From: Ruditapes philippinarum | Lineage: Eukaryota | Reading direction: 5' to 3' | NCBI RefSeq assembly: GCF_026571515.1 | Contig: NW_026855956.1 | Span: 1-64,000 of the forward strand | DNA: 64,000 nucleotides | In this document: one piece after another, positions 3,196 to 49,900 of the stretch | How the letters are laid out: each line of letters opens with the position of its first letter | How positions within the stretch are numbered: the first letter of the stretch is position 1 | Notes under the pieces: model-generated | The model's database searches: none | Told to the model about the DNA's origin: nothing | What the model saw: only the letters and a program-made list of their open reading frames with translations | Translations under genes and position numbers: made by a program

Positions 3196-4203
3196 CCAAG
3201 AGCTGTCAGAAGGACACGCCGCGCTCGACTTTTTTAGTGCTTGCCTATAAAAACAAAAACTTTGGAACAGTTAAGGGCACACCAAGACTTTAAACTAGGA
3301 ATTTCTAAGTACAAATCAAGAAACATTTTCACAGAGTTATCTTCTCTTGCTTACAGATAGGTCTCATGATGGCAGCATAAGAACTCCAACTTCCAAAGTA
3401 ATATCTCAAATGGTTAGGTCAACAAGTGGACAAGAATGAAAAATTTTAACTGAGTTTCTAAGTCAAAAAGGGCCATAATTCAAATAAAATCCTTAACAGA
3501 ATTACTTCTCCTGCCCATGTTTGGGACCATGATGGTAAACAAGTATTTCCAACTTTCCAATTTAATATCTCAACCAGTTTCAGTCAAAAAGTTGACTGGT
3601 ACAAAAAACTTAACCAAGATTCTAAGTCGATAAAAGGCCTTAATTTTTAAAACAAATCCCTGACAGAGTTACCTTCTCTTGCGTACAGATGGGGGTAATG
3701 ATGTGAAATAGCATTAAAAGTTTCAAAAGCAATATCTCAAAAGGGTTAAGGCAATAAGTGGATTTTACCCATATTCAATGTATTTTCTAAGTCAAAAAGG
3801 GGCATAATTCTGTCAAAAAACCTTGACAGAGTTATGTCCCTCTTGTCTGTTGATGAAGGTCGTGATGGTAAACAAGTATGGTCAGTTTCAAAGCAATACC
3901 TCCAATGGTTTTGAAATAAAGTGAGGTGGTACAAAAAACTTAACCAAGCTCAATACACTTTCTAAGTCAAAAAAGGGCCATAATTCTGTCAAAAACCTTG
4001 ACAGAGTTATGTACTCTTGTCTGTAGATGGAGGTTATGATGGTGAACAAGTATGGTTAAGTTTCAAAGCCATACTTGTAATACTTCTGAAAATAAAGTGG
4101 GGTGGTACGAAAAACTTAACCAAGGTGTGACGCCAAACGCTAACGCGCCGACGCCGGGGCGAGTAGGATAGCTCCCCTTTTCATAGAAAAGTCGAGCTAA
4201 AAA
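3196..4203 (-). mobile_element. HINE/Helentron-type element with ~155-175-bp internal repeats in TRAPPC8 intron 7
   Basis: Minus strand starts TTTTTAGCTCGAC...GAGCTA, followed by a GGCGTC-type microsatellite and about 5 core repeats (TCTAAGT anchors 3304, 3457, 3621, 3787, 3961). 3' end reads AGTCGAGCG...GACAGCTCTTG. Confidence 0.75.
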
Positions 4204-4212
4204 ATTTCTCAC

Positions 4213-7200
4213 CATGTCATTCAAAGTTCTCATCTGTCGCTCCGCCCAGGGTATCAGAGCTCGCACGGCAAACTCGTGTATAAATATCCTAATGCGATCT
4301 TGATCACTGGCCGTGAGACACATCCCGTGTCCTGGAAATTGACCTTTGTTTTGCATATTAAATGAGGATGATTTTGACATGGCTGACTGAACGCTGTTGA
4401 GACTGCTAGTGGAGCCCTGGTAGTCCGAGCTGTATTCTAAGGTCGGGCTCTGTAGCGGGCTCTCATCTGACAAGGCCAAGGGATGGTCCATAACTGAGTT
4501 AGTCACTGAGCCTAGACCATCTATACCTATAAGATATATATTCCACAAACTATTTTCTGTTCCAATGTCAGCTGTCCCAGGTGGGTTTTTTTTACATGTA
4601 TTTTCAAAACCCTCTATAAATGTATATTTCAATCCCGAGACGTTTCAAAAACGCGAGCTAAATGCATTTTTCAATCCCCTTTCTCTTTTTTAAATGGCTA
4701 AAATCATACAATAAGTTTCCAGTCCCATTCATTGAAAAATAAACACACTGAAATACACACCTTTGCAATATTCTAAGAACAAATCAACTCATCTCCAATA
4801 AGCTAAGATATTGATAGACAAGTAATTTATAGAAAGAGTCCACCTGAAACTGTAAAGGTCACAAGGCAAGTTTACTTGTGCACTGAAAATAATACAAAGG
4901 CAGTCACCTGAGCAAAACATAATTTTTCCTTAAGCAAACTGGATAGATCCAGCACATCAAAAAAGTCTATGTACCTAGTTTGACTCATAGCCACAATGTC
5001 AAAGCCTACTCTGAAGGGCAAGTGATGTGCAGTCAGTGTGATCTTAACCATTGGATAATTGAGACCCCATGAAATCACATTTTGATAAATTAGTAAATTA
5101 AAGAAGACATTGTAACTTCATACCTTCATCAGAGTGGGAATTTGTGTCTAGAACATGGTTGTTAGTTTCCGGTGCACCTTCTTCCAGCCTTGTAGGGAAC
5201 ATGGAATCATCGGCACCACTGCTGCCCCCGGCATCGTAATCAACCCCTTCCTATGAATGAAAAAAAAATCTGTAACATAATAATATGAAAATGATTATAC
5301 AGGTTGCAATGGATGCTCTAATCATTATTCTCATTTACTATAAACTAAAAAAAAATGTTACTATATAATAAACCTCTTGACCACTTCCTCTATGAAATTC
5401 GTACTTATGACATACAAAATACCACTCATGAATCCAAATCTGTTTGTTATCTGGAATCTTCCAATATTTAAATAGTAACTGATAAAATGTTTTTTAGGTA
5501 ATTCCATATAGTACTGTATATTACTGCCCTACTAGATTTACATGAAAAATAAAATTACGAGATAGAACACAATATAAAAAGCAGTATTTTGGTCTTGCTC
5601 ACAATAAATAATAAATACTTTTATCTCCTCATTCCTTTGCCACCCCCAGTTCCCTCATTTCTTTTTTTTAATTTGACATTTCATTTACAATGCTTGTTTT
5701 TTTACTCTCTGGTTGGGTCTGAAGTCACACCAACACTGTTATGATTGTATGGTGACTTTCCGAAAAAAGAACTCAGGTGCGCTTCTGTACATTATTTCAG
5801 GCATGAAGAGTAGGCATCAGAGTAGAACCACCAACCTTTTCTTAAACTGGCTGGAAAACTCCTGCACAAATAATATTACGTCCCTGAAGGGATTTGAACC
5901 AACAACAGTTAGGGCCAGTGGTAAAGAGCCAGCGATTTGAGCCACTTGTCCACAGAGGCCCCAACAAGGCATTATTAATATATAATTGGCCATATCTATA
6001 CTTATGCCATGTTGTACAATAAAGTTCATAATTATGTCTCAAGGAATTTTAGTAAGCTATTAAAAGAATTTTCAGAAAGATCCAGTATTACTTTTACATG
6101 TTATTAAGATAATAGAAAAAATATTTTAAACAATGCTGGGACACTCCCTACATTCCCTTTGATCAAAGCTTTCCACATGGTGTTACTTTATACAGAAAAG
6201 AAGTCTGAAGAAAATTCAATTTTTCATCTAGGTGACCTTGAACTTATTTAAACCAGTCTGAAACCTAATCCAAAGGTAAGTGAAGCATGGACAGACATTA
6301 TATATGTAAAATATCAGTCTATAAGTTGTTACTGAATATCCCTGGAAAAATGGTTAGTAAGTAGTACTAAGTACGATAAAGAATAGAATCAAGGAAGAAA
6401 GGAAAGGACACACCGGCAGCTGCATGATATACTTCAACATAAAAGTTTTGCCCCATTCCCCCCCCCCCATCCAAAAGGACTGCCCACGTTAGACTGCTCT
6501 TTTAAAAGAAAAGATAAAAAAATACCATGTGAATCCCTCAAATAGATAAGCATACAAAATCGGAAACAAAAAAAAGAGTTACAACTGTACATGCAAATCA
6601 CACATGTAATGTATAAAAGAAAAAGAAAATAAAAAATGTACATAGAAATATGAAAAGCTGAAATACTTAACAATGTTAAAATTTGCTTCATGTATGGAAA
6701 AATGAAAAGTAGGGCTAAAATTGAACACTTGCAAGGTTTAAGTGAAATAAAAATGTAACCTGTAGCAGTTTTATTTCATATACAATGTAAATTTATCAAC
6801 AAAAACTTCAGAAGTAAAACTGATGCTATGTTGAACTTTTTTTTGTTTTGTTTTTATTTTTTTTGCCAAAAAAAACCCTTCAAGCTTGAAAACAATTGTG
6901 CAATTGTGAGTCATAAGAAGCAAAATTCTAGCCCATAAATGCATGCTTACTCAATGCAAAGAAGAAAATTCTAAAACCGTCACACCAACACTTACCCAAG
7001 GTATAAAATATTTAGCCTTTTGAGGCTTTTTCTGTAAAGAATTAAAATCACAACACCTTGTTAGTACAGAACACAATCACACCCCTAAAAGCTTTAAATG
7101 CAAACCTCCCCATCCATCCACAACTGAATTTGTATAAAAAAATTTTTGTTCCTGATTTTTTAATTCATAACTTCCCATTGTGAATTTTAATGGCTTCCAA

Positions 7201-14830: not shown

Positions 14831-15461
14831 TATCATATTTTGGACTGTTTATTGTATTTTGTCATAGACAAATCAAGAATGACACGTGTGAAATTTCTTT
14901 AAACTAATATATGACATTGGGGCATGTCTATCACGATATTGTGTATTTTGTTGGTGGAACCTACAGATAACGACGAAGTTTTACGTGCAATTTTCATTTA
15001 TTTTCCTGTCAGAGTTTCTAAAGAATAGCTAGTTCATAAAAAAAACAGAATGTGCAATTACTCCATTAAATAATTAATTTTCCGGCTAATCACAATTGAT
15101 AAAAAAGAAAAAATCATGTTATTGTTCATGCAATTTTAATTCAGATTTGCACCAAATACGAAATAATCATTATAAATCGTTAAAATATACATTAGTATAT
15201 GTATATATTGTATCTATGATGCATAGTTTTATACGTATTTGAAAAAAAATCGTGATATTTTTTATGTAAGTACACAATATTATGACTACATTATTTAAAT
15301 TTTAACCAATATATAACACAAAGAAGACAATTCATTAACATACTAAAATAAAATATTAATTATATATCAATAGAAATTGAGAAATATATCAATTACAGCA
15401 ATTTCCTATATATTCTATATCGTCAGCTAATTTGTCAGCAGTTTAGTATCGCCTCCATACT

Positions 15462-15471
15462 GTGACGTCAC
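15462..15471. promoter_or_regulatory. CRE-type palindrome GTGACGTCAC ~50 bp upstream of the GABARAPL2 ATG
   Basis: Perfect TGACGTCA core extended to a 10-bp palindrome at a promoter-proximal position. Confidence 0.5.
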
Positions 15472-15521
15472 TTATCAAAATAAATAAGAAATTTAGGTCA
15501 CTTTACGAATATTGTTCCAAA

Positions 15522-18500
15522 ATGAAATTCAAGTTCAAGGAAGAGCACACATTTGGTAGGTTTTCTATTCCCCCTGCGTATAAAATCATCCTTACCGATT
15601 TTACTGTCCCGGTGCCATTTTTACATCACAATAAAGATAATTTTAAAGGGGTCATGATCATGGTCACTTGACATGAATTTCCATTTTCTTTTCTAGATTT
15701 TCTGTTGTCATTTTAACTTTATCTTGGAATTTTCAAGTGCAAGAACAATATTTCTGGTTTTTTTTTCTGTTTTATACTCAAATTAGAAATTATGATCTAA
15801 TAAAATGCTACATGTGTACATGTACATCATAATTATTGAATTTTGTCATCAATTGTTCATAATTTTCTTAATAATAAGAATTAATTTGGGAAATCCTGTC
15901 ATTAAACTGTCCAAACACAACTGATAATCACAGCAATTCCACTCTCGGAGAATAAAAGGGAATTAGACTTCTGTCAAACTAAGGCAAAGTTCCTGCAAAG
16001 TGATGCACATGCCGTGACATGGGAGACAAGACACTTCATCCCCTGGGCAGGCACCTAAGTCTTAGCCACTTAAATTTGTAGACATTTAGCCCCTCAAGAC
16101 ACTTCTGTACCTGAAATCTGTAAGACATTTGACACCTCAACCCTATTTATTCTAGAGTAAATATTTCAACAACAATTATGCCCTTGTTATGTTAATTTTT
16201 TTACTTTAGAATATGTAACTCCAGGCATTTTTAAGTATATTTATAAAATATAACATACATGTACTGGTCGGGGACCATCAACCGGACACTTTTTGAACAT
16301 TTTTGCGTACAGAATTCATAATTTTTAACCTAGAGACCAAAAAAATTGACATGGTTCAGCTAGGTTCTTCTCCTAACTAACAAACTAGTTTGTTTATTTC
16401 TGATTGTATTAACACTTATATCTGAGGCTCGACAAGGAGGGTATCAAAATTACCTAAATTGTCTACACTACAGTACCATGTGTCTCCGGACAGATATGTA
16501 CATTACATGATTTAATTCAGATAAAAGCTTGGGTGTTTTGATTTTTAACATGATATACATTATTTCAGCAACAAATGCTGAAGTTTTGGATATATTCTAT
16601 TGTTTACTCTGCAAATGATAATAGCTGGTATATGAGGTCAGGCATTGCTTTCGTGACCCCCAAATTTCAACGTAAACATTCTTGAAATAGACATTAAAAT
16701 ATTACCATTTACGGAGGTTGAAATAAATTTATTGGCTTAATTTTAGAAGAAACATGAACGAAGAAAATACTATATTAAGCATTTTGATGGTTGTCCGGGT
16801 TTGGTGGTCCCCAACCAGTAAGCATAATTTATAAATTATATCACGAAAGACAATTTAATTACAGTTACATGAACCATATAACATAAAACTTTTTATAACA
16901 ACATGTAATCATAACAAAACGAAAGAAAAATAAACATGAGAGAGAGCTTTGTATAATTGCTGACAAATATAATTATGTGTGTTTCAACATGAACAGTAAA
17001 CTGTCAAGGAACAAGAATAAGGCAGTGTGAAAGAAATTAAAAGTACATGTATCATCATAAAATTTAATCTTGGAAAAATCACAGATTTTAAATTCATGCA
17101 TGAGTGACAGTGATTTTTCTGCTTATATAACAGACTCCGAAAAAGGGCCTCTTCCCAATTGAAATTTTCTTTAAAATCATGCAGTTTTCCCAAAAATCTG
17201 AATTTAAACCTGGTTTTTTGGTTCCCAAATTAGCAATTTTAGGGATAATTTTTCCCAAAATCAAGAGGCTAAGGCCAGTCTTCCCATTTAAGTGAGAAAA
17301 ATCACTGAGTGATAAACAATAAAATATTTTGATATGTGAACCTTTCATTGCAAGTTTAGAAATTACAATAATAAAAATATTTTAGAAAGAAAATATGTTC
17401 ATTTAATAATGACCATTTTTATTTGCTCTAGCCAGATTTCAAAAACATCCAGCCCTTTTTTAAGAAAAAAAAAACAAAAACAACATTGTTACAACAATAT
17501 TTCTATTTTATTAATATGTCTACATAAATAAATTTATAATACATGTGTATATAATAAAAAACAAATTAAAACAACAAATATATTTAATCACATAGATTAC
17601 AAAGTTCTCACATTTTTCAACATTTTTTATATGAAACGCTTAATCAGAAAATGAGGGGTGAAGTGTATCAGATTTCATAAAAAGAGAGGTGAAGATTCTG
17701 CCAAAACTGACTTTGGGTGAACTGTCTGTAAATCACATCTAGTAAATGTCATGTGCTATTATACTATTTAACTAGTTCAAAATCACTGTAAGCCTATTTC
17801 AGAGTTTTTAACATACACTATATTAAACTCTCTGTCTCTGAAAAAGTGTTGTAATAACTATTGTATCATAGTTTGGGGACATTGCTGTTGAAAATGTGTC
17901 AGAGTTAAATCGTATACATAATACATGCACATTGCGTTAACTGGAGCGCAGGTATTAGTTACCCTGCAGAGCATGCTCATTGATTGGTTCATTTTGTCTG
18001 GGGTTTACACATTGTGATGACGGGGAAAGGGAAAGCGATAGAAATATTATTTTCAGATGCTCGTTCATTGGTTCCTTTTTTCTGGGGTTTCATATTGTGA
18101 CATCAGGGAATGTGTTTTTATTTTTGACTATGATACAAAAGAGAAAGAACATCAAAACACTCGGCAATCTGATTTATACTCATTTATCTGATTTATACAA
18201 ATCAGATAGCCTCGTGTTTCGATGCTCTTTCTATTACATATTCAACCCATCACTTGTCAGACTAATATTCGACTTTTCACTTGTTATACTAATATTCGAC
18301 TTCTCACTTATTATACTTATATTCAACTTCTCACACTAGACATTGGATACTGTTACAGCATATATACTAATATGCTAAAAGTAAATTCCGTTACAATTCC
18401 TCATATCATTCAAAATATATGACATATACTAAATTCCTGTACAATTACCTTGTCTCGACATTGCATTTATAATAATCATATAGTATTTGTACTGCTTATT

Positions 18501-21500
18501 GAAACTAGTTATAACAGTGGTATTAATTTATTAGTATCTATTTGCCACATTTCCCCTTCTTTCTTGAGGTTTGCTCAAGAAATAAGAGGGCAATATAACA
18601 TTTTACTGTTGCATAACCCTTAACTGCACAGGGCCAAATAACCCTTCTTTGTAGAGGCCTAATAAAGACTGCTTCCATAACCAAACTAAGCTCTTTTTTC
18701 CCCAGTTTGGTCCTCAAAATTCCCCAGTCTTTTGAAATTTTGATAGAATTTTGAACAAAATAAATGATGGTGTTGAATTAAGGTCTTTTACTGCCTTATT
18801 AGTATTTCCAAGTGCTTTTTGCTTTTCTATTTTGAAGAACTTGTTATAAGTTTGTGTTAAATTTGAGACCCTTTTCCCTAAGTATGCCAAAATCACGCAT
18901 ATTTTCCCCAAGAAAAAGGCTGAGGCCCCTTCCCCAAAAATGGTGTTTTGGCCCTGCTGCATTACATAGATATAAAAACAAGCGTAATATTTATTTCAGA
19001 TCAGAGGAAGGCAGAATCAACAAAAATAAGAGACAAGTACCCAGAGAGAATCCCGGTAATAGAATTTTTACTATTTGATTATACATGAATTAGCTATTGA
19101 ACAATGCTTGAATTAGAATTTTAATTATGCTCAGGACGATATTCATTAGAATCTTCCTTTACTAGGAACCTTATTGAAAGAATGATTCATAAATTATGTG
19201 AACCTGAATTATGTCCATGTTACTGCTAAACACAGATACTAAGGAAACTGGATAATTTATTTATACACCCAATCTGTATCACATTGTTTCATGTAAGAAG
19301 GAATGACTGCAAAACTGTTTTTATTTTCTATAATTTTTTTTATCCCTAATACCAATAAAGAAAAAAGTAATTTAATTTGCATATTAACACAATTAATTTT
19401 TTATATATATTTGTTCACATGACAAAAGTTTTAGTTATTTAGAGTACTTTTTTAACTGACAAATCTAGAAAAAAAAAAGAAAAAAAAAGAAGAGAAAAAA
19501 CAATATTTCTTGGAAAAAAATTATGTTGTACAACTTGTGATTTATAAGAAACATATTTATACAGCAACGTTTTATCTACATGTTTATTTAAGGATCATAA
19601 ATTTTGCTATTACATGATTGTATATTTTTTTCACTCAGGTGATTGTTGAGAGAGACCCGAAGTCACAAATTCAAGACATAGACAAAAGGAAGTTTCTGGT
19701 ACCAAATGATATTTCAGTTGCTCAGTTTATGTGGATAATAAGAAAGAGGATACAATTGCCTTCAGAAAAAGCCATATTCCTGTTTGTTGAAAAAGTTCTT
19801 CCACAGTCAAGGTAATTTTAATCTCGTTTTTTACAGGCAATTTTTCCAAAACTTTGTTCATACAAAATTACATTTACTACTTTTGACTCCACGCCTCATT
19901 GACTAACCAGTGCCGCCGCCATTACCATATATAGTTAAATCACAGAGTTGGAAAGACCCCCTGACAGTAGAATCTATCTTTGGTGCAGGCAAGTGATTTG
20001 AAATCAGTGTCTGTCAGTATCTTTCTTGTAAGAAAGCTACCCAACGATCTTATAAATGTTTAAGGCTATAACTCGTACACATGTGCCTGTTTATGTATGA
20101 AATAATGCACTTGAACAAAATGAGGACATTTATTTTAAGGTCTTCTGCCAAAAGAGCTAACAAAAAAGATGTACATTTACATGTATGTCTTTCTAAATGA
20201 TTCCTCCACCCCATCCCCCCCCCCCCCCCCCCTTCTATAGCTGGCCGAGTGGCTGTTTATAGTCTGCTTCGCCTCAGGAATATTCTTTAAAAACATGCAG
20301 TTTTCTCCCTTTAATTTACATCAAGGGTTTTTTCCCCTGTTGTTGCAAAAATTAAACCAAATTTAAGGATATGGCCACTTTCCCTTTCTTTGTAAAAAGC
20401 TCTGTATGACTACACTTTGGAAGTACATCCCTGTTGCTAAGGCCTATGTCCTATTTGTTCTTTGAAGCACATTGATTAATACTGTAAAAAGGTCAAGTCA
20501 TTGTTTTTGCACTGGGAAACACATGTAACTGTGTACACACATGTATATTATAACAGTAACTAGATTTGTCAATAATAATGTCATACATAATTATTATTAT
20601 TACATGTATGTTTCATTTGATGACAGTCAAAGGCAATAGTTTGAAGGAATTTTTTAGTTGATAGTACATATTGTTTAAATTTAATCAAACTGTCAACTTT
20701 CTCAATAAAGACTTAGAATTTTTATACGCAGTGCCAGGGATTTTTTTATTTTTATCTATTTCCAATTCATTGAAGTGAATTGTCAACTTTTCAAGACATA
20801 TTAATGTGTCATCTGTCACCTTTGGGTCATTAACTTTTAAACTTTTAGTATATTCACTGTATTTATATAAGTGTAAAGATGGTTAATGTTATTGTAAGTA
20901 CATCATGTAACATGTACAAGATAAAAGGTCATCCTAGGTCAAGTGAATAAAGGTCACTAACCTAGAATCATGTGCACGTGACTGCAATGGGTTTGAATGT
21001 AGTACAAAGATGTTGAATAATATACATGTATTATGTGAGGAAGTTGTGCAGCTCTTGAAAATGTTGATAATCAACTGGTATCTACTGGTTTCAATGTCAT
21101 GTTGAAATATTGCAGGGACGGGCTCTAGAGGTCTTCTAAATTCTTGGGAAAGTACAGTGTTAACATCACCTAAAACCTCAAACTAAATAATTATTGGCAA
21201 TATCTTCAGTTCTGTTGTTGACTGTTTAGTAATAATATTTTATTGTTATGAATGATGTTTCTAAATCATTACATTGATATATTCCAATACAAACATGTGT
21301 TACAATTTGTACTGTTAAAACTTTGTTCTCATTGTTGTAGAGTGCCTCTCCCCTTTTCTAGATTTTTATACTTCACAACAGCAGGTGTCAATTTGCTGTG
21401 TAGCAGCAGTTATGTTACCCATAATTCACTTCAGTATTACTAAATTTTTCTGGTCCTTTGGTATCATACTTAAATCATGTTGAAGATTGAAAACCACTTG

Positions 21501-22615
21501 AACTTGACCTTGTGTATAAAGGGGACATGAGGGATATTGTACTTTCAATTTTCTACCATTGAGCAGACTCAATTATACCAAGTCGGCAGATTTCACTTTA
21601 AAACTTTGTTTTCATTGTTTCTAGAGATCTCTTTATTTAGTGTTTTTTCACCTTATATAATAGAGGCCTGTAAAATTATGGACTCTTCCTAATGGAAATT
21701 TCTTTAAAATCATACAGTTTTTTCCAAAATATAAACTTACAACAGCTTTGATACTTCCCAAATTAACAATTTTAGTGATACATGTAGCTTTTCCCAAAAT
21801 CAAGAGCTTTAAAGGGCCACTTCCCAATTAAGTGAGAAAAACCACTGCTTTTTTCCAGATTTTTTATGTTTGATTATCATCATCTAACATAATATTGTGA
21901 AATATTTCAGCGTGAGCATGGGATAATTATCTAACATAATATTGTGAAATATTTCAGCGCGAGCATGGGATAATCATCTAACATAATATTGTGAAATATT
22001 TCAGCGTGAGCATGGGATAATCATCTAACATAATATTGTGAAATATTTCAGCGCGAGCATGGGATAATCATCTAACATAATATTGTGAAATATTTCAGCG
22101 CGAGCGTGGGATAATCATCTAACATAATATTGTGAAATATTTCAGCGCGAGCATGGGATAATCATCTAACATAATATTGTGAAATATTTCAGCGTGAGCA
22201 TGGGATAATCATCTAACATAATATTGTGAAATATTTCAGCGTGAGCATGGGATAATCATCTAACATAATATTGTGAAATATTTCAGCGTGAGCATGGGAT
22301 AATCATCTAACATAATATTGTGAAATATTTCAGCGTGAGCATGGGATAATCATCTAACATAATATTGTGAAATATTTCAGCGTGAGCATGGGATAATCAT
22401 CTAACATAATATTGTGAAATATTTCAGCGCGAGCATGGGATAATCATCTAACATAATATTGTGAAATATTTCAGCGTGAGCATGGGATAATCATCTAACA
22501 TAATACTGTGATATATTTCAGCGCGAGCATGGGTCAGGTTTACGAAGAACATAAAGACGAGGACGGTTTCTTGTACATAGCATACAGTGGGGAGAATACA
22601 TTCGGAGAAAATTAA
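15522..22615 (+). CDS. GABARAPL2: GABA(A) receptor-associated protein-like 2 (GATE-16, ATG8 family), 118 aa, 4 exons
   Basis: Exons 15522-15555, 19000-19055, 19639-19811 and 22522-22615 splice in frame to [118 protein letters not shown]. The [22 protein letters not shown] motif is typical of GABARAPL2, and Gly116 for lipidation is present. Confidence 0.96.
16262..16820. mobile_element. MITE with imperfect TIRs (TACTGGTCGGGGACCA / TGGTCCCCAACCAGTA), probable TA TSD (GABARAPL2 intron 1)
   Basis: Inverted ends of ~25 bp seen directly. Confidence 0.7.
17108..17307. mobile_element. MITE, 13-bp TIR CAGTGATTTTTCT, 5-bp TSD AGTGA
   Basis: Perfect TIRs with AGTGA on both flanks. Related copies at 21638-21847 and 45346-45600. 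Confidence 0.82.
18260..18335. repeat. 27-bp tandem repeat x3
   Basis: ACTAATATTCGACTTTTCACTTGTTAT repeated with minor variants. Confidence 0.8.
18629..18956. mobile_element. MITE, TIR CAGGGCCAAA, 5-bp TSD CTGCA
   Basis: 10-bp perfect TIRs with CTGCA on both flanks. Ends 43 bp before GABARAPL2 exon 2. Confidence 0.8.
21638..21847. mobile_element. Copy of the 17108-17307 MITE family
   Basis: Shares internal sequence (TTTCCCAAAATCAAGAG, TTAAGTGAGAAAAACCACTG). The left TIR is degenerate and no clean TSD is visible. Confidence 0.7.
21879..22533 (+). repeat. 47-bp tandem array (14 copies) of the GABARAPL2 intron 3 branch point, acceptor and exon 4 start
   Basis: Unit ATAATCATCTAACATAATATTGTGAAATATTTCAG|CG(T/C)GAGCATGGG. 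Post-acceptor starts fall at 21911+47n (n=0..13); the last (22522) is the real exon start. Confidence 0.97.
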
Positions 22616-24720
22616 ATCATACAGGACAATTGTTTGTTGTGATATAGTATAATTTTTGTTATATATTTGGGGGTATCATCTCTGTAAATCGTAAATCGCT
22701 GTAAAGAAATGGTTGCTTCTCTAAATTCATTATTCTGGTAAAATGTTGCACTATTCCCATTGTAACTTGGAAGAGATTTTGCATTCATTTTTTGAAAATT
22801 TTTACTTTTTTTTTTCTTTGATAAAATCATGTATTTTTTACTCAGTATTTGGTCTTAATTAAGATTAGAAGATTATATATGGCCAAAATGTTTTAGAATT
22901 AGTTATCAGCACATTTATTTTCTGTCTTGTATCGGGCATGGCTTCGAGATATGATTTTTTTTTTTTGGCACAAATGTTATTTTAAAAAGATGAACATTAG
23001 TCATTTCATAAGTAATACTTGATTTTTGATGTTGTTTTCATTAAACGCTTGCCTTTTTTGTGATTTTTTTTTGTTAAATATAAATATAGACTTGTTATGA
23101 TAAAGATTTTTGGAACAATTTTATGCAAGAGTTTTTTTTGTTTGTTTTGTTTTCTTCTCTGTAGTATTAAAAGTATTTTTTACTCTGTCCTGTGAACATT
23201 TATTACTATCTGTTTTGTTTTTTTCAATACAATTCAGATTGTTTATTTCATCATTTGTATTAGTCTGTTTAGTTTTGTACTTTAGAACAAATTTTTAAAT
23301 ATAGTACAAACTGTATATACTAGGCCAAGTTACAAACCTATTGTATCAGAATTCAGATATCAAGAAATACTAAAGATGAATTTATTATCAAGTGGAAGAA
23401 ACAGTCAAGACGGTATAAGTTTAAAGGTTTTATTTAATGATAATAAACAACTACGGTATTCCACCCTCACGAGTCTTGATCACCTCACCGTTGTAAAATA
23501 TCAGGATACATATATATAGAAATCAAAGTCTTAACGTATAAAAATTTGTTATATTTATAGTCACATGATTTGTTCTTAAAATAAATTTTAGGTCATTTCA
23601 GATATCAGAAATTTTAAAATGTTTATTTGTTTTGTCTGAGACATGAGCTATAAATAACTCATGAGCTATAAATAACTCATGCAGATGACATCATTATTAA
23701 CTCTTTAATCAGATGATTTTTTTGCACTCACTTTTTTGTTATCATTGAAAGGTACATGGATTTTTTCTCACTTTTTTTTTCAATTTAATTTACTGAATCT
23801 GTATATTCCTAGGGTTATATTTAGTTGTTTTGATCATGTGTAATTTGGTAAAAAAATGCATTGTATGATTTACTAGTAAATGGTTGCACAGTTGTATATG
23901 CTTCCAAGAATTTTACCAAACACTGTAAAGCTCTCCAAATACAAAGACCCTGACCAATCCAATAAAACTTGTATGATTTGATTTTAGTACTAATTTGAAA
24001 TTGAGCAATAAAATTGTTGTATTTTTTAGACTGGATTTCAGTCTTAGATCACATTTCAGTTTTGTATTGCACTGAGGAAATTGTAATGTGCCGGTATATA
24101 AAGCTAAAGGGAAGAAATTGTGTTACATGAAACACATTTACTGTTGTTAAATTGGCTTTAATTAAGTTTTCTTATGAATTGTAAGCATAGTTCTCTCCCT
24201 TGACTGTGTGAAATGTGAACTCTGCACAGTTTTCTCCCTTGCTATGTGAAACTGTAAATTCCATGCAAAAAATGTGAAATGTTTACCCCATACAGAATTT
24301 TCTCCCTTGCTATGTAAAAATGTGCTATACATGTATGTGAAATTTAAGTAGCTTTATCTATATTTTATGTGGATTGTTGGTGTAATTGTTTTAAAAGCAT
24401 TGGAAAAAAAGGCATTTCACTTCAGATAAATCGTTAATAGGAAGACTAAGTTAAATTCATACATGTTAAAAGAAATTATCACATTTTTATTTTCTTGGAA
24501 CCTTCCTACCTTATGGTAATGTTGGAGATAAGAGACTTAATACTTCCAGTTTGTTGGTGAAGTGTTTGGATGATTGTTAAATAATTTATATAATTAGCAT
24601 TTGAAGTGAATATCTCTAATTGTAATTTGAACGTAGTTATAAAATGAAAAATAAATCATTGCAGACCTTCACAGGGAAACGCCTTCTATAATTGAAAAAG
24701 AAAACATTACAGGCCTTTAA

Positions 24721-25087
24721 AGTGACACGCCTGCAGATGAATAAAACAATCACTAAGAAATATTTATCTATAGTATAGGAAACATATATATATATTATAA
24801 ATATTCACTAGCCTGGTTAAACTTTGAAAATATAACATAAAATATGACAGAAACAATACTTTAGCCAGTAAAATTCTACCCTGTCAGTTAGCAAAGATAT
24901 CTGGATATTTTGACATGTAATAAGTAATTTCTGTGAATTTTTTTCCCAAGGCTAGATCAGATCATATAATTTGTACACTTGACAACTTTTTACTCATTAG
25001 ATCAAGTTTATGACATTTTGCTAATAAGAACAATTTTTTTTTTAACCTTTCATTAGGAAATAAACACAAATCTGGAGGTGTGCTGCT
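24721..25087. mobile_element. TTAA-flanked MITE (Kolobok/piggyBac-like target)
   Basis: TTAA|AGTGACACGCCTGCAGAT ... ATCTGGAGGTGTGCTGCT|TTAA, imperfect 18-bp TIRs. Confidence 0.55.
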
Positions 25088-25194: not shown

Positions 25195-26724
25195 TTTTTA
25201 GCTCACCTGAGCTTGCTCAGGGTGAGCTTTTAGGATCGGTGAATGTCCGTCGTCCGTCGTCCGTCGTCCGTCGTCCGTCCGGCCGTCCACAATTTCTTGT
25301 GAACACTCTAGCGGTCGCATTTTTGCCTCAATCATCATCAAACTTGGTCAGGATGCTTATCTAGTTGAAAGCTCGGATGAGTTCGAACATGGGTCATCTC
25401 GGATGAAAAACTAGGTCACAAGAGCTAAAAATAGAAAAACCTTGTGAACACTCTAGAGGTCACATTTTTGACCCAATCATCATCAAACTTGGTCAGGATG
25501 TTTGTCTAGGTGATAGCTCGGATGAGTTCGAACATGGGTCATCTCGGATGAAAAAGTAGGTCACAGGAGCTATAAATAGAAAAACCTTGTGAACACTCTA
25601 GTGGTCACATTTTTGAACCAATCATCATCAAACTTGGTCAGAATGCTTTGTCTAGTCAATTGCTTGGATGAGTTCGAACATGGGTCATCTCTGATGAAAA
25701 ACTAGGTCACAGGAGCTAAAAATAGAAAAACCTTGTGAACACTCTAGTGGTCACATTTTTGACCCAATCATCATCAAACTTTGTCAGGATGCTTGTTTAG
25801 ATAATAGCTCAGATGAGTTCGAATATGGGTCATCTCGGATGAAAAACTAGGTCACCGGAGCTATAAATAGAAAAACCTTGTTAACACTTTAGCGGTCACA
25901 TTTTTGCATCAATCATCATCAAACTTGATCAAGATGCTTGTCTAGGTGATAGCTCGGATGAGTTCGAACATGGGTCATCTCGGATGAAAAACTAGGTCAC
26001 AGGAGCTAAAAATAGAAAAACCTTGTTAACACTCTAGTGGTCACAATTTTGACTCAATTGTCATCAAACTTGGTCAGGAAACTTGAATAGGTCATTGCTT
26101 GGAATAAATCGAACATGGGACATCTCGGATGAAAAACTAGGTCACATGAGCTAAAAATAGAAAAATCTTGTTAACACTCTAGTGGCTACTGTTGTGATCC
26201 AAATATTCTGTTAATTGGTCTGAAAGTTTTTTTTTGATGATTTCTAAGTCAAGATCAAACATGGGTCATCTTGGATGAAAAACTAGGTCACACCGCCCAA
26301 ATATGGAAAAACCTTGTTAACATTCTAGTGGTCACATTTTCGACTCGATTATCATCAAACTTGGTCAGGATGCTTGTCTAGGTAATTGCTTGGATTAGTT
26401 AGAAATCGCATGTGAAACTAGGTCACCGGAGCTAAAAATAGAAAAATCTTGTTAACACTCTAGTTGCTACTGTTTTGATCCAAGTATCCTGGAAATTGGT
26501 CTGAAAGTTTGTTTTGATGATTTCTAGGTCAAGTTTGAATATGTGTCACCTGGGTAAAAAACTAGGTCGCACTGCTCAAATATGGATAATCCTTGTTAAC
26601 ACTGTAGTGGTCACATTTTTGACTCACCTGTCATGAGACTTGGTCAGAATGCTTGTCTAGGTAATTGTTTGGATGAGTTTGATAATTCAGGTGAGCGATC
26701 TAGGGCCATCATGGCCCTCTTGTT
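25195..26724 (+). mobile_element. HINE/Helentron-type (pearl/DINE-1-like) non-autonomous element with ~10 internal ~145-bp tandem repeats
   Basis: Starts TTTTTAGCTCACCTGAGC...CTCAGGGTGAGC (subterminal IR), then a (GTCC/CGTC) microsatellite and ~145-bp core repeats (anchors 25301, 25446, 25591, 25737...). Ends with CAGGTGAGCGA, the hairpin AGGGCCATCATGGCCCT and CTTGTT. Confidence 0.85.
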
Positions 26725-33875: not shown

Positions 33876-36800
33876 ATGGATGCCATTCACAACAATATTG
33901 GTTCAAATTTAACAGACTATTTCACCTTCACGGAACCGTTACTTCTTTTCATGTTTCTTGCAAAACAATTTCCAATGAACATAAGCTTCCCATGCACTCA
34001 TGTTGGACATGAATATTCATTTATATTGTCGAGCCATTCAGAAGAAATATTTACGATTGGAAGCAATAAAAGCACAACTTTCACGTGTATTGGAAATGAT
34101 AATCCACTTACTCAAGTCTACACTATTGGCATGGTAAAAGAAAGTATTGATGTGCAATTACATGGAAAGCTTTTAGGGATCTCGAAACTTCAAATTGTGA
34201 TTTCAGGACCTGATCCCGATGAAATTATATTTAATGGGACGTCTAGTAAGACAAAAACATTTCATACTGCAGAACCAGACGCTAGAAAAACACAGCAAGA
34301 ATTTGTGTTTCCAGTAACAGTTCTAAGAAGTATTCGGCCAATAGACAAAATATTTATGATATTAATGACAGCGTTTCTTTTTCTTATAACATTGGGGTTC
34401 GGTTGTAAACTTGATTTAGGCATCGTAAAAGAGTGTTTAAAGAAACCGGTCGCTCCAGGGATTGGGTTCGGATGTCAGTACCTAGTAATGCCACTGGTGA
34501 GTATTAAATTAAAACTTGTTAGTGCATTCGTAGTAATGAAGGAACATTTTAAAAAATGAGACTGCAATTTTTATTATTATTTTGCTATAAGCGTTTTCCA
34601 TTAAGTACACTTATGTACTTATATGAATCTGTATAGCGGATGTACTCTTACTTCAATGTACATTGAGTCACTGCATGAAGTGTTATATAGTTCCCTTAAT
34701 TTTATAAAATTTAGCCACGTCAATCAACATGAATTACGAAGCTGCACATGTTGGATATTTGATATTATTCAGGGTAATACGAAAGTTAGACTATCACCTA
34801 ATGTACTTTTAGATATACACAATGTATGTAAATATTAATATTAATAAATCTTTAAGTACATGTATAATTCAATTTTGACTAAGTTAATCATGACTTATAC
34901 ATATATACGCAAATTCTTATCATAAGCCAGTGGCCGGGTTGGGTCTAATAATTATGTTCTTACAAGACTCTTCGAGAAGTACGAGTAAATATCATGAGCT
35001 AGTTTAACGTTGGTTTTTACGTTGTATCATGCGTGTATTCCATGTCGTTTTCCGACAACTTATGGGGAAAATGTAATAAAACTAGGAACATAATGATACT
35101 GAATTTGAAATATATTAAATGTCAGAAGTTGAAATTCCCATCTTTAAATCACATTATAGCTGTTAGTTATGACCTTCAATAATAAAATTACACGTTATAT
35201 GTTTGTGTTTGAGATTACTTTATGGTATACCAGCGAAATAAACTAGGACAAGTGCAAAAGTTTATATTTACTGTTTTGATAAAGTTCGCCTTTACTTTTA
35301 TTATTTCATGTTTGAACAATAACTAGCACAATACCTTAAAGGGTTAAAGGCACATTATGCCTCAGAAACCATTGAATTTTCTGGTTTTTTTTAGGAAGGG
35401 CAAGCATGTCTAAGAAATAGTTTTAGACATGTTAAATGCTTTTCAAAATATAATGCTGAATATAAATCAATTTGTTATAAAAGTGGACAAAATTTTAATA
35501 TAAACAAAGTACATGTAGTATTTTTGACTTCCATATAAAATTATCACTGTAATAGTGCGTATAGCCAAAAAGCAACAGAAGAAAAACATGGAGCAGGGAA
35601 TTGGGCAATAAGTATTTTTTTTGGAAATTTTAATAGTGCACCATAAGTAAAAAGTTTTTGAGAAACAAAACTAATATAAAAAACCCGTAGAGCGCGATTT
35701 ATTGACGGAAGATTATTTCATTTGAATATGTTTGCACTGCGAAATTCTCCAGTTCGCTATTCATTGTACAAATGTACTATAATAATGTGTATTGTTATAG
35801 ACGTTGAAATATGAAATTTTTTCAAAACGGCTTATGTTAAGTTTTTTTGATATACATGTGTATATGATCAGTACATGTGCTGGGATTGACAAATATGCAT
35901 TTTATTTGGATTTTAAAGGCGTTTTGAGCTCCACACCCCAAGTGTCTGTGATCCCAGCTGGTGCTCAAAAGTCCCATCATGCACATGTTTTCAGTATTTA
36001 TAATCATTCTTAACCTATGTTGACGTGGGAATATTCCTATCTTAATTAACGGCAAAAGGTAAAAATTATAAATAATATTAGATTTGTATAAATGACGGCA
36101 TATGTCAACAAAATCTATGTCATATACATATTTTTGTAATTTTCAGCTTGGCTTTGCGATCGCTAAATTATTGCCCCTGGATGTGGACAGAAGTGTAGCG
36201 CTGGGTATATTCGTGTGTGGCACGTGTCCCGGGGGAGGTATTAGCAATATCTATACGTACCTCCTGGACGGAGATGTTTCACTGTCCATAACAATGACAT
36301 TTCTGAGCACTGTAGCATCTTTAGGTAGGTAACCAGTGATGACGTTTGAGGACTTATATACCTCGGGCTTTTGTAGCTGGGGTTGAGGACGCTATTTTCA
36401 TTTACTTATAATTATAAAAAGTGCAAGTTTGAAACCCACAGGGGATATATGGATTTTATTCATTTGAGGAATGTTTTCACCTAGGTTATGGAAGGTCGAT
36501 GGTTATACCTAAAAGGAAATCCAGGCTCCGTGCTTACAATCAAGATTAAATGATGTTCATTGAAACATGATACTGTCATCTGATTTCGAGTATTTGCAAC
36601 GAAACAAATTCATTTAGAGATAGTATATAAGAAAAATATATAAATAAAGATTATTACTGGATCAAAAGACTAAAAGTAGCTATTTGAGCTCAACAATAGT
36701 GTCGCCACATAATTTTTACCACTCATTGTCCTAACAGAAACATCATAAACGATATTGATGATATTGAAATGGACTAAAATCAGTTTCTTTTTGTTGAATC

Positions 36801-37473
36801 CGGTTTTTCTTTCTCTATTCCAGGTATGATGCCACTATGGATTTACACACTAGGGCAGCTTTTTGTAGATGACGAGTATAACATCACCATTCCATACATC
36901 AACATGCTGCAGATCATAGCATTAATAACAGTGCCTTTGTTCGTTGGCATTTTTATTAAATATAAATTTCTCAAAGCTGCGCTTAAAATCCTGAAAATAT
37001 TAAAGCCGGTCACGGTTATAGGGATTTTACTTTTCCTGTGCATTGGTTTGTACTCAAATTGGTATATTTTCAAACTGTTCAGACCGCTTCACATTGTTGC
37101 TGGATGTCTATTGCCTTATCTAGGTTACATTATAGGGGGCGCTATCGCTGCAATATTGAAACAGCCATTTTCCCGCGTAAAAACTATTGCTCTTGAAACT
37201 GGGATGCAAAATGTGGGCGTGGCCTATCTGTTGATGATCTCATCGTTTCCGCCTCCTCATGGTGACTTATCCTCAGTTGCCCCTATGGCATCTGCTTTAA
37301 TGACACCATTCCCGCCATTTATAGTGACGATTGTTTACTTGATATACAAGAAATGTTTCAAAAAGTATGAACCAGTCATTGATGAAGAGCCAGAGGTCAA
37401 GGTCGGTAACGAAGGTCAAGAGGTCAAGGTAAATGGAGAGCAACTGCTACTAGAAAAACTTAGTTCTGTATAG
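33876..37473 (+). CDS. SLC10 family sodium/bile acid cotransporter-like protein (~482 aa, N-terminal extension), 3 exons
   Basis: Exons 33876-34496, 36147-36324 and 36824-37473 are in phase. SBF-family motifs: GFGCKLD..., PGIGFGCQYLVMPL, CPGGGISNIYTYLLDGDVSLSITMT, MMPLW, TIALETGMQN. AATAAA signals follow at ~37656 and ~37791. Confidence 0.9.
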
Positions 37474-46900: not shown

Positions 46901-49900
46901 TTTGAAATTGAGAAAAATACAGAGAAAGAACCGAAAGCAGAGAAATGTAGCAAAAGTCCAAAATGTAAATGGCTGTTGAGTCCAATTCGGAATATGTTTG
47001 ATATTTCATTGTTGACCGATGTAAAATTCGTGATATTTCTTCTGTCGTTGATTGCATGTCATCTAGCGTATTCATTAGTGTTAAACATGACTGTAGATCG
47101 TGCACTTGAGTTGGGAATGACAAAAAATGAGTCAGCGTGGTTAGCTTCTTCTATTGGTAAGTTGGTTTTTATTTTATTGTTGTGTGCGCTCCATACCTTT
47201 TACAGGACTGATTTTGAGAATTTGGCTCCCTATAAGATGCTAGAGGCATTTTGTAGTACAGGTGGTATCTTGGTGTATTTAACCTATTTAAGGTATGCTG
47301 AATCCGGTAAAAGTGGATACCAAATTGAAAAACTTGATCTTGACCATTGAAATGGCCATTTGAAATGACCACTAAAATGGGCACCAAATTTCTTTAACAT
47401 CAAATGGACGATATATCAAATAAAACTTTTAAGGAAAGGAAAAGCCTGAAATTTGTCACAAAGCATGTTAGGTAAAAACAAATTAGACACCAAAACAGAA
47501 TTAAAAAAAACAAAACAATCCAATATGGCCGAATAATCCAAGATGGTGGACATTTTTCTATAGGCCAGTATAATACTAATATAGAAATAATATTAGAGAT
47601 AGTACTGAAAATTTTAAGGCATTTAAACATAAGAGAACTGTATTTAGGGTTTACGCAGCGAACACTTCACTCTTACCTGCCCTATCTGCTTGATATAGGG
47701 TTTTCATGTATTTTATCTTATATGCAAGCATATAACGTGACTACTCAGATTCCTACTGCGTATGTGTGAGGAGGTTAAACATGTGCATGCAAAATATACA
47801 TTAATTAAAGGCACCTTTCTCTGAGTACTCTTGGGTTTTGATGCTCGTTTTTTGTTATTGGTCGTCGTCTTCGTTCTTCTGTTATCGGTCCTGGTCTCAG
47901 TTCTTTTGTTGTCAGATGTTCTGTTATCGGTTCACGTCTCTGTTTTTGGTCGTCGTCTTTATTCTTCGGTTATCGGTTCTCGTCACCGTTCTTCTGTTAT
48001 CGGTTCTCATCTTCGTTCTTCTCCGTTCATCTATCATCGGTTCCCAACTCTATTCTTCTGTAATCAGTCATGGTTTCCGTTTTCTTGTTGTCAATTATTC
48101 TGTTATTGGTCCTCGTCTCTATTTTTCTGTTATCAATCCTGTCTCCGTTGTCTTGTTGTCAGTTTTTCTATTAACGGTCCCTGTCTCTGTTCTTCTGTTA
48201 TCGGTCCTCGTATCTGTTCGCTTGTTGTCAGTTCTGCTGTTATCGGTCCCTATCTCTGTTCTTCTGTTTTTGGTCCTTGTCTCTGTTCGCTTGTTGTCAG
48301 TTTTTGTGTTCACGGTCCATGTATCTCTTCTTCTGTTTTCAGTCCTCGTCTCTGTCCTTCAGGTTCTCTTCTCCGTTCGCTTGTTGTAAGTTTTTCTGTT
48401 ATCGGTCCCTGTCTCTGTTTTTCTGTTATTGGTCGACGTCTCTGTTCGCTTGTTGTCAGTTCTTGTGTTCACGGTCCCTGTCTCTCTTCTTCTGTTTTTG
48501 GTCCTTGTCTCTGTTCGCTTGTTGTCACTTCTTGTGTTGTTCGCTTGTTGTCAGTTCTTGTGTTCACGGTCCCTGTCTCTCTTCTTCTGTTTTTTGTCCT
48601 TGTATCTGTTCGCTTGTTATCAGTTCTTGTCTCTGTTCGCTTGTTGTCAGTTCTTGTGTTCACGGTCCCTGTCTCTCTTCTGTTTTTGGCCCTTGTCTCT
48701 GTTCGCTTGTTGTCGTTCTTGTGTTGTTCGCTTGTTGTTAGTTCTTGTGTTCACGGTCCCTATTTCTCTTCTTCTGTTTTTTGTCCTTGTCTCTGTTCGC
48801 TTGTTGTCAGTTCTTGTGTTGTTCGCTTGTTGTCAGTTCTTGTGTTCACGGTCCCTGTCTCTCTTCTTCTGTTTTTGGTCCTTGTCTCTGTTCGCTTGTT
48901 GTCAGTTCTTGTGTTGTTCGCTTGTTGTTCTTGTGTTCACGGTCCCTGTCTCTCTTCTTCTGTTTTTGGTCCTTGTCTCTGTTCGCTTGTTGTCAGTTCT
49001 TGTGTTGTTCGCTTGTTGTCAGGTCTTGTGTTCACGGTCCCTGTCTCTCTTCTTCTGTTTTTGGTCCTTGTCTCTGTTCGCTTGTTGTCAGTTCTTGTTT
49101 GTGTTGTTCGCTTGTTGTCAGTTCTTGTGTTCACGGTCCCTATCTCTCTTCTTCTGTTTTTGGTCCTTGTTTCTGTTCGCTCTGTTTTTGGTCCTTGTTT
49201 CTGTTCGCTTGTTGTCAGTTCTTGTGTTCACGGTCCCTGTCTCTCTTCTTCTGTTTTTGGTCCTTGTCTCTGTTCGCTTGTTGTCAGTTCTTGTGTTCAC
49301 GGTCCCTGTCTCTCTTCTTATGTTTTCAGTCCTCGTCTCTGTTCTTCTGTTATTGGTCCTCGTCTCTGTTCGCTTGTTGTCAGTTCTTGTCTGCGTTCTT
49401 CCTTCTGTTATCGGTCGTCTTCTTCGGTATTGTACTTTCGGTACTTGTTTCCTGTTCCGTTAAGGTCTTCTCTTGTATACTATGGTTGCCGTCATTCTGT
49501 GTCGATGTCCTGGTTTTGTCAGTCTTGTAGTCATTTATTCGTTCAGTGGAGTAGCGGGGGATCGAACTCACGACCCCTTGATTTGTAGGCAGACAGTGTT
49601 ACCACTGCACCATAGCGCCCGCTCTGAATAATAACCATTTTTGAAAGTCCTTTATACATTAAATACTATTTCAATGGCTAACAAAGGGTGTATTACAATT
49701 ATATTTTAACACCTCTACTATGTAGCCATCCCACGTGACTTTTATATATGGTCAAAGTAAATATTACTCGATTTATTACAAGTAATATTTTTATAGATAA
49801 CTTTGCTGTTACTTTAAGATATCCTGGATTTATTGGAGGGTACCCAGAATTCTAATGTATATCAAATGATGTGATAATCTTCTTGTAGAATTTTCTCAAA

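What the first reader, a model, noticed from the sequence alone, without database searches (positions are those of the whole stretch)
21879..22533. Fourteen tandem copies of the 3' splice site of the last GABARAPL2/ATG8 exon; each upstream copy ends the protein at Gly92-stop
Seen: each 47-bp unit carries a branch-like CTAAC, TTTCAG, and the first 12 nt of exon 4. Splicing exon 3 to any of the 13 upstream AGs reads S-(V/A)-S-(M/V)-G-TAA, a 92-aa protein. Only the 14th acceptor (22522) gives full-length ATG8 with Gly116. That unit alone differs at two positions (AATACTGTGATATATTTCAG vs AATATTGTGAAATATTTCAG). Established: ATG8 proteins need an exposed C-terminal Gly for ATG7 activation, and stops in a terminal exon escape EJC-dependent NMD. 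Inference: the spliceosome must skip 13 near-identical decoys, so copy number could act as a VNTR dial on functional GABARAPL2 dose, or yield a truncated Gly-ended isoform lacking the last helix and strand. The terminal Gly may be coincidental and the product unfolded.
Basis: partly seen in the sequence, partly recalled or inferred. Interest (0 to 1): 0.85.

Follow-up and report, generated by a model that had tools for sequence, protein, structure and literature searches.

The report
Splice-acceptor minisatellite in clam GABARAPL2
In the Manila clam, the last intron of the autophagy gene GABARAPL2 ends in 13 extra tandem copies of its own splice acceptor; this repeat type is already known ("mirage" minisatellite), and no RNA data could be reached to show whether the extra sites are used.

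Summary
Window 21879-22533 is a 47-bp x 13.9 tandem array (97% matches). Each unit holds CTAAC, TTTCAG and the first 12 nt of the last coding exon of an ATG8 gene. My four exon translations match RefSeq XP_060589708.1 (GABARAPL2, Ruditapes philippinarum) exactly. That model uses the 14th acceptor, at 22522. Any of the 13 upstream acceptors would read S-(V/A)-S-(M/V)-G-TAA, a 92-aa product lacking helix 91-98 and strand 105-110.

The kind is known. [quoted passage not shown] The human F7 intron-7 VNTR is the mirror case, with 5-9 identical donors of which only the exon-adjacent one is used.

This scan has already noted the same kind of array on several other pieces of this same genome (s1-803853, s1-793113 and others).

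My best reading is a young, probably neutral by-product of a minisatellite-rich genome. The upstream copies would be mostly silent pseudo-acceptors.

The terminal Gly looks coincidental.

The parts
15522..15555 (+). Exon 1 coding part (ATG..TTTG|gtaggt), residues 1-11 plus the first base of codon 12
   Evidence: Read. Its translation [11 protein letters not shown] matches P0090 11/11.
19000..19055 (+). Exon 2 (tttcag|AT..CCG|gtaata)
   Evidence: Read. It matches P0090 18/18.
19639..19811 (+). Exon 3 (ctcag|GTG..TCAAG|gtaatt). It ends in phase 2, with AG of the Ser88 codon.
   Evidence: Read. Pfam ATG8 PF02991 E 2.9e-22. It matches P0090 57/57.
19812..22521 (+). Intron 3 as annotated (2710 nt). 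Its last 643 nt are the array.
21879..22533 (+). 47-bp x 13.9 minisatellite. It has 13 decoy units plus the authentic unit, and each unit holds CTAAC (branch-like A at -24), a weak pyrimidine tract, TTTCAG and 12 nt of exon 4.
   Evidence: TRF. Units listed. Unique in the genome.
21911..22489 (+). Span from the first decoy exon start to the last decoy stop. The 13 decoy acceptors lie at 21911+47n, each followed by C-G(T/C)G-AGC-(A/G)TG-GGA-TAA.
22490..22521 (+). Intronic part of the authentic 14th unit. It differs from all decoys at -16 (T>C) and -10 (A>T).
   Evidence: pyrimidines in -20..-5: 8/16 against 7/16.
22522..22615 (+). Exon 4 coding part: third base of Ser88, then [28 protein letters not shown](116)EN and TAA. 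A purine-rich GAR block starts at 22544.
   Evidence: Pfam ATG8 E 2.7e-10. It matches P0090 30/30. GAR block.

Best explanation
This is a 'mirage'-type minisatellite. A 47-bp segment spanning the 3' end of intron 3 and the first 12 nt of the last coding exon of the Manila clam's single GABARAPL2 orthologue was duplicated in tandem. It was then amplified to 14 copies by slippage or unequal exchange, in a genome where minisatellites are very common. It is a young, probably neutral or slightly harmful by-product and not a regulatory device. The mature mRNA is made mainly by splicing exon 3 to the last copy, the only one followed by the exon body, and the 13 upstream copies behave as mostly silent pseudo-acceptors.

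What is shown: the anatomy, the identity of the gene, the use of the last acceptor in the RefSeq model, and what a decoy product would lack.

What is inferred: that the last site wins. Two features could favour it. It is nearest to the purine-rich GAR block of exon 4, at +23 against +69 to +633 for the decoys. It also has one more pyrimidine in its tract. A further inference is that any decoy-spliced mRNA yields an unfoldable 92-aa fragment whose terminal Gly is accidental.
For: Array anatomy. The exon translations equal XP_060589708.1 (GABARAPL2, R. philippinarum), which carries no isoform label. That protein is recorded on a single contig of 173,656 bp, the length of this window's contig. 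RefSeq does annotate truncated forms of this gene when it sees them, for example Argopecten isoform X2, which diverges exactly after exon 3. Minisatellites are dense here: 8 arrays (period 15-200, at least 4 copies) in 123.7 kb, 4.5% of bases. Eight decoy units are 100% identical and only the edge unit is diverged, the turnover pattern described for mirages in PMC3087553. Mirages at both 5' and 3' boundaries in amphioxus Adh3, globin, TnC and PGBD5 are reported not to give aberrant mRNA. The F7 VNTR uses only the exon-adjacent one of 5-9 identical donors. The same kind of array is noted on other pieces of this genome (leads only, not tested here).
Against: No RNA evidence of any kind was obtained. 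The decoys are complete 3' splice sites, identical to the authentic one from -9 to +12. [quoted passage not shown] On my reading of 'proximal' as the upstream copy (my inference from the 5'-to-3' scanning model, not checked in the original), that result would favour decoy 1. The RefSeq model may rest on protein homology, and junction reads into identical units map to several places and may have been dropped. The predicted RNA structure does not shield the decoys. The ESE argument is inference from vertebrate and fly work.
Confidence: 0.6

Rival explanations
1. The decoys are really used. A substantial share of transcripts splice exon 3 to one of the 13 upstream acceptors, most likely the first ones. 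The array would then lower functional GABARAPL2 output in proportion to copy number and would produce a 92-aa Gly-ended fragment or an unstable mRNA.
For: Each unit is a full acceptor with a branch-like CTAAC at -24 and no AG between it and TTTCAG. The authentic unit differs by only two bases and one pyrimidine. No structural shielding of the decoys is predicted. PMC1557585 cites globin experiments in which a duplicated acceptor was spliced only at the proximal copy, which I read as the upstream copy. A paralogous GABARAP-like gene and an LC3-like gene exist and could buffer a loss of dose. A truncated isoform at the same junction is annotated in a scallop.
Against: RefSeq lists only the full-length protein for this gene. 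No short protein identical to exon 3 appeared among cluster representatives of 31-100 aa. That is weak evidence, since members hidden inside clusters are not seen. All published mirages, and the F7 VNTR, keep regular splicing. The gene is ultra-conserved (82% mean column identity across animals), so a strong loss of dose should be selected against.
Confidence: 0.25
2. The copy number, or the whole expansion, is an assembly artefact. The real allele would have one or a few units.
For: Units 7-11 are identical over 235 bp, which short reads cannot count. The contig has N gaps of odd sizes and is an unplaced 174-kb piece. PMC3087553 notes that one amphioxus mirage was mis-assembled in the draft genome.
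Against: Five distinct unit types are interleaved in a non-periodic order, so at least five units must exist, and an assembler does not invent ordered variants. The same kind of array is noted in many genes of this assembly and is a documented natural phenomenon elsewhere. No gap adjoins the array.
Confidence: 0.1
3. The array is kept by selection for a purpose other than dose control. Examples would be an intronic splicing enhancer or U2AF 'landing pad' that raises use of the weak authentic acceptor, or a source of a Gly-ended peptide with its own role.
For: The authentic acceptor has a weak tract (8/16 pyrimidines, against 12/16 for exon 3). Gly92 is nearly invariant in the family.
Against: The near-identity of the units shows recent origin or turnover, not conservation. 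The stop after Gly follows from AT-rich sequence in any frame. The fragment lacks the last helix and the last strand. That strand is central to the sheet of the ubiquitin-like fold in solved GATE-16 structures such as 1eo6 (my knowledge of the fold). ATG7 and ATG4 recognise the folded domain and its C-terminal tail (established knowledge).
Confidence: 0.05

Closest known systems
[quoted passage not shown] 2002 NAR, which is not held)
   Same: The units are head-to-tail and span a splice junction plus a piece of exon. The 3'-boundary type exists (BflGb6). The authentic copy sits at the exon-side edge, the inner units are homogenised and the edge unit is diverged. Unit lengths of 10-160 bp bracket the 47 bp seen here.
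   Different: The host is a bivalve mollusc, not a cephalochordate. There are 13 decoys of near-perfect identity, against 3-6 units of 81-100% identity in BflGb6. The host gene is an ultra-conserved single-copy ATG8 gene, and the array sits before its last coding exon. Regular splicing and length polymorphism were shown in amphioxus but could not be tested here.
Human F7 intron-7 37-bp VNTR (PMC1557585)
   Same: It is a minisatellite whose edge unit holds the real exon/intron junction, so that several identical functional splice sites compete. Only the exon-adjacent one is used, and copy number is polymorphic (5-9).
   Different: It repeats the 5' splice site, not the 3' splice site. The mechanism proposed there is 5'-to-3' scanning to the first donor. 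That does not carry over to acceptors, where the same polarity would favour the wrong (first) copy.
NAGNAG and other closely spaced tandem acceptors (PMC1449888, PMC4484395)
   Same: Several AGs compete for one donor.
   Different: Those sites share one branch site and tract and lie 3-18 nt apart. Here each copy has its own branch site and tract, the spacing is 47 nt, and the outcome is truncation and not a small indel.
Intronic decoy 3' acceptor elements (for example the caspase-2 In100 element; recalled from memory, not checked here)
   Same: It rests on the idea of a non-productive acceptor that engages splicing factors.
   Different: That is a single evolved regulatory element acting on exon inclusion, not an array of exact copies of the real site.

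Membership tests
Mirage-type exon-boundary minisatellite | Head-to-tail tandem repeat of minisatellite unit size | tested here: met
   47 bp x 13.9 copies, 97% matches, no indels.
Mirage-type exon-boundary minisatellite | The unit spans an intron/exon boundary and carries the splice signal plus part of the exon | tested here: met
   Each unit holds 32 nt of intron end (CTAAC..TTTCAG), 12 nt identical to the start of exon 4 and 3 junction bases. The exon is confirmed by Pfam and by identity to XP_060589708.1.
Mirage-type exon-boundary minisatellite | The authentic junction is the edge unit contiguous with the exon body; inner units are homogenised and the edge unit is diverged | tested here: met
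   Unit 14 continues into the exon and alone carries two private changes. Eight inner units are identical. The pattern is described in PMC3087553.
Mirage-type exon-boundary minisatellite | Regular splicing is maintained despite the extra sites | not testable with these tools
The only indirect evidence is that RefSeq lists the full-length product alone.
Mirage-type exon-boundary minisatellite | Copy-number instability between haplotypes or individuals (VNTR behaviour) | not testable with these tools
   There is no second haplotype contig in the assembly and no reads were available.
ATG8 family, GABARAPL2 (GATE-16) subfamily | ATG8 ubiquitin-like domain | tested here: met
   PF02991 on exon 3 (2.9e-22) and exon 4 (2.7e-10), searched exon by exon.
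ATG8 family, GABARAPL2 (GATE-16) subfamily | Closer to GABARAPL2 than to GABARAP or LC3 | tested here: met
   The best solved relatives are GATE-16/GABARAPL2 (1eo6, 4.6e-55, residues 1-116 ungapped), against GABARAP at 1.6e-44. The named relatives are all GABARAPL2.
ATG8 family, GABARAPL2 (GATE-16) subfamily | Conserved C-terminal Gly116 followed by a short tail removed by ATG4 | tested here: met
   The sequence reads ..ENTFG116-EN-stop, and G116 is invariant in 41 sequences. Cleavage itself was not tested.

The most novel reading that the evidence does not exclude
The 13 upstream acceptors are used in competition with the real one, so that array length, if polymorphic among clams, sets the share of GABARAPL2 transcripts that are productive. 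This would be a heritable, stepwise, reversible splice-site VNTR rheostat on an autophagy gene. A related reading is that the last of 14 equal acceptors is chosen exclusively. Either outcome would make the locus a natural 3'-splice-site counterpart of the F7 model and would test the rules for choosing among identical acceptors.
Probability: 0.15. Interest if true: 0.7.

Novelty: new member of a known kind. Interest (0 to 1): 0.38.

Why it matters
As a sequence feature it is ordinary for this genome: one more exon-boundary minisatellite of a kind described in amphioxus and, for donors, in human F7.

Its value is as a natural experiment. Fourteen complete acceptors, 13 of them near-identical decoys, sit 47 nt apart in front of the last coding exon of an ultra-conserved single-copy gene, and each choice has an unambiguous read-out (GGGATAA against GGGTCAGG). 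Public clam RNA-seq would show at once how an animal spliceosome chooses among equal 3' splice sites. The duplication experiments cited in PMC1557585 gave contradictory answers to that question.

In the paper library I searched I found no report of mirage-type arrays in molluscs. The repeated notes of such arrays in this genome suggest that a genome-wide census would be worthwhile.

Tried and rejected

2. Spliced model. Exons were searched apart by reference. The full-length protein used afterwards (P0090) is the tool's own record. For the same reason I did not look up the hypothetical 92-aa product by exact sequence.

3. Short products. A search for short proteins containing exon 3 (31-100 aa) found no 92-aa clam product. 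This is uninformative. Only cluster representatives are searched, and the exact 118-aa protein is itself recorded on one contig only, so clam transcript assemblies seem to be absent from that collection.

4. Metagenome scan. An exact scan of metagenome contigs for the unit junction gave 0 hits.

5. RNA structure shielding the decoys. This is rejected. Partition-function folding at 37 and 20 C gives unpaired probabilities for the tract and AG of 0.13 and 0.09 for the real site, against about 0.2 for the decoys.

6. Array coding or structured RNA on either strand. This is rejected. No ORF of 25 aa or more lies within the decoy units, and the ORFs that overlap the array only reach into its last two units or start in the last one. 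Stops occur within 1, 3 or 5 codons in the three + frames, and there is no Rfam hit in 15000-25000.

7. Dispersed repeat or transposon origin. This is rejected, since the array is unique in the 1.41-Gb assembly.

8. Microhomology at the first duplication. I found only a 1-nt (G) match, next to an AT(C/T/A) triplet run at the left edge. That is inconclusive.

9. Single-sequence AF2 model. It was poor (pLDDT 54) and was replaced by the alignment-based model.

10. Original mirage paper. PMC117041 is not held, so I relied on the two papers that cite it.

Full report
**Observation**

Tandem Repeats Finder reports a single array at 21879-22533 with period 47, 13.9 copies, 97% matches, no indels and score 1240.

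I wrote the units out in register. Every unit reads ATCATCTAACATAATATTGTGAAATATTTCAG|CG(T/C)GAGCATGGG-ATA. Each therefore holds:
- a branch-like CTAAC with its A 24 nt before the AG;
- no other AG in between;
- a weak pyrimidine tract and TTTCAG;
- 12 nt identical to the start of the downstream exon.

The unit classes are as follows:
- Eight units (1, 3, 7-11, 13) are identical 'T-type' copies.
- Three units (4, 6, 12) are identical 'C-type' copies.
- Unit 2 has ATT for ATC, and unit 5 has GTG for ATG.
- Unit 14 alone has AATACT..GATATATTTCAG and runs on into GGGTCAGG.., the exon body.

The array is unique in the 1.41-Gb assembly. It is not next to an N run.

**The gene**

I read the exons directly from the sequence:

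| Exon | Coordinates | Note |
|---|---|---|
| 1 | 15522-15555 | ATG..TTTG, then gtaggt |
| 2 | 19000-19055 | |
| 3 | 19639-19811 | ends AG in phase 2, before gtaatt |
| 4 | 22522-22615 | includes the TAA stop |

Exons 3 and 4 were searched apart by reference and both hit Pfam ATG8 (2.9e-22 and 2.7e-10).

A search with exon 3, and then with a tool-returned mussel relative, brought up P0090. This is XP_060589708.1, 'gamma-aminobutyric acid receptor-associated protein-like 2 [Ruditapes philippinarum]', 118 aa. My four exon translations match it 11/11, 18/18, 57/57 and 30/30.

That protein is recorded on a single contig of 173,656 bp. This is the length of the window's own contig, C4443. The window is therefore the annotated Manila clam assembly, and the RefSeq model uses the 14th acceptor.

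The best solved relatives are GATE-16/GABARAPL2 (1eo6, 4.6e-55, residues 1-116 ungapped), ahead of GABARAP. The genome has two further ATG8 loci, on C5469 and C8107. This is the only GABARAPL2-type copy.

**What a decoy would make**

Exon 3 joined to any of the 13 upstream AGs (21911+47n) reads Ser88, (Val/Ala), Ser, (Met/Val), Gly92, TAA.

An AlphaFold2 model built on a 41-sequence alignment (pLDDT 90.8) places the elements at H4-8, H11-24, E28-35, E48-52, H57-67, E77-80, H91-98 and E105-110. In the solved GATE-16 fold that strand lies in the middle of the sheet (my knowledge of the fold), so the fragment is unlikely to fold.

The Gly end looks accidental. The repeat breaks after GG, so any next base gives Gly. 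The AT-rich unit then gives a stop after 1, 3 or 5 codons in the three frames.

**What kind of thing it is**

A literature search found the mirror image in man. The F7 intron-7 37-bp VNTR has a first unit that holds the exon 7 donor, so that 5-9 identical donors compete. All are functional, yet only the exon-adjacent one is used (PMC1557585).

I checked it in the papers. [quoted passage not shown] These have units of 10-160 bp, length differences between haplotypes, homogenised inner units and diverged edge units. RT-PCR indicated that regular splicing is not disturbed (PMC3087553, PMC3902484).

The clam array meets every structural criterion of that class. The two behavioural criteria, regular splicing and length polymorphism, could not be tested here.

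The scan's notes list the same kind of array in several other windows of this genome. I did not verify those.

**Base rate**

Minisatellites are dense here. I counted 8 arrays (period 15-200, at least 4 copies) in 123.7 kb of this contig, or 4.5% of bases. That is about one per 15 kb.

With a few hundred thousand splice junctions (an assumed figure), a neutral process would be expected to hit junctions on the order of a thousand times per genome. One such array in one gene therefore needs no special explanation.

This array is the most homogeneous in the window, at 97% against 75-90% for the others. It is therefore young or actively turning over.

**How it most likely works**

I commit to the silent-mirage reading at about 0.6. 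The array is a by-product of slippage or unequal exchange. Exon 3 is joined mainly to the last acceptor, and the upstream copies are pseudo-sites used rarely if at all.

Indirect support:
- RefSeq gives only the full-length product for this gene.
- RefSeq does annotate a truncated isoform at exactly this junction in the scallop Argopecten (P0199..PQSS+LPEISKAI).
- All published analogues keep regular splicing.

A plausible but inferred reason for the choice is proximity to the exon body. A purine-rich GAR block (GAAGAA..GACGAGGAC) starts 23 nt after the real acceptor, but 69 to 633 nt after the decoys. The real unit also has 8 pyrimidines in -20..-5 against 7 in the decoys.

RNA structure does not explain the choice. 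The two private changes of unit 14 each break a palindrome present in the decoys (AATATT and GAAATATTTC). Even so, partition-function folding gives the real acceptor no accessibility advantage.

**Rivals**

- Real decoy use, about 0.25. The decoys are complete sites, identical to the real one from -9 to +12. [quoted passage not shown] Paralogues could buffer a loss of dose. Its NMD argument uses the vertebrate EJC rule. In invertebrates the 3' UTR, longer by up to about 700 nt, might itself trigger decay (my own knowledge).
- Assembly artefact in copy number, about 0.1. Five identical units in a row cannot be counted by short reads. However, five unit types in a non-periodic order argue that a real multi-copy array exists.
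- A selected function of the array or of the fragment, about 0.05.

**What could not be done**

- A metagenome scan for the unit found nothing.
- The original mirage paper (PMC117041) is not held.

**Verdict**

The array is a new member of a known kind, a mirage-type exon-boundary minisatellite. I found no report of this kind from a mollusc in the library I searched.

Interest is moderate (0.38). The locus would make a clean natural model for choice among identical 3' splice sites, and existing clam RNA-seq would settle the question in an afternoon.

Noticed in passing
window 21879-22521: Decoy units contain two perfect palindromes, AATATT and GAAATATTTC, the second directly before the AG. The only two substitutions private to the authentic unit each break one of them (AATACT, GATATATTTC). 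Predicted RNA accessibility does not clearly differ.
   Followed up: partly
window 21911-22489 (units 1, 3, 7-11, 13): The eight T-type decoys read CAG|C-GTGAGC, a 5'-splice-site-like GTGAG one base after the decoy AG. The C-type units and the real exon read CGCGAGC, a CpG transition difference. Any consequence is unknown.
   Followed up: no
P0199 (Argopecten irradians GABARAPL2 isoform X2, 96 aa): This RefSeq isoform in a scallop leaves the family sequence exactly at the exon 3 end (..PQSS then LPEISKAI-stop). C-terminally truncated ATG8 forms at this junction are therefore annotated in another bivalve.
   Followed up: no
window 25296-26679 and C4443:92303-93408 (L009 8303-9408): The same 145-bp satellite unit forms two arrays (9.6 and 7.6 copies, 79-83% matches) in opposite orientation on one contig. 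It is a dispersed satellite family.
   Followed up: no
window 47845-49390: Nested 27/69/95/159-bp pyrimidine-rich arrays lie inside long + strand ORFs (up to 585 aa) with no Pfam hit. Whether this is a repetitive coding exon or plain satellite is undecided.
   Followed up: partly
window 54380-55108: A 30-bp x 24 minisatellite (83% matches) with a 7-8-bp sub-period TCATTTA.
   Followed up: no
window 4063-4632 (-), 33876-34559 and 36826-37473 (+): The neighbouring genes are a TRAPPC8/Trs85-like exon on the minus strand and two exons of a sodium/bile-acid symporter (SBF, SLC10-like) gene on the plus strand.
   Followed up: partly
L010 950-1175 (C4443:104950-105175): A 38-bp x 5.9 array of 100% identical units ends about 45 bp before an exon-like stretch. 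It does not include that exon's acceptor, so it is not of the junction type.
   Followed up: partly
P0001 (74 aa, ENA contig of 2819 bp): This genomic exon-3 read-through is 98% identical to the clam exon but has a different intron start.
   Followed up: no
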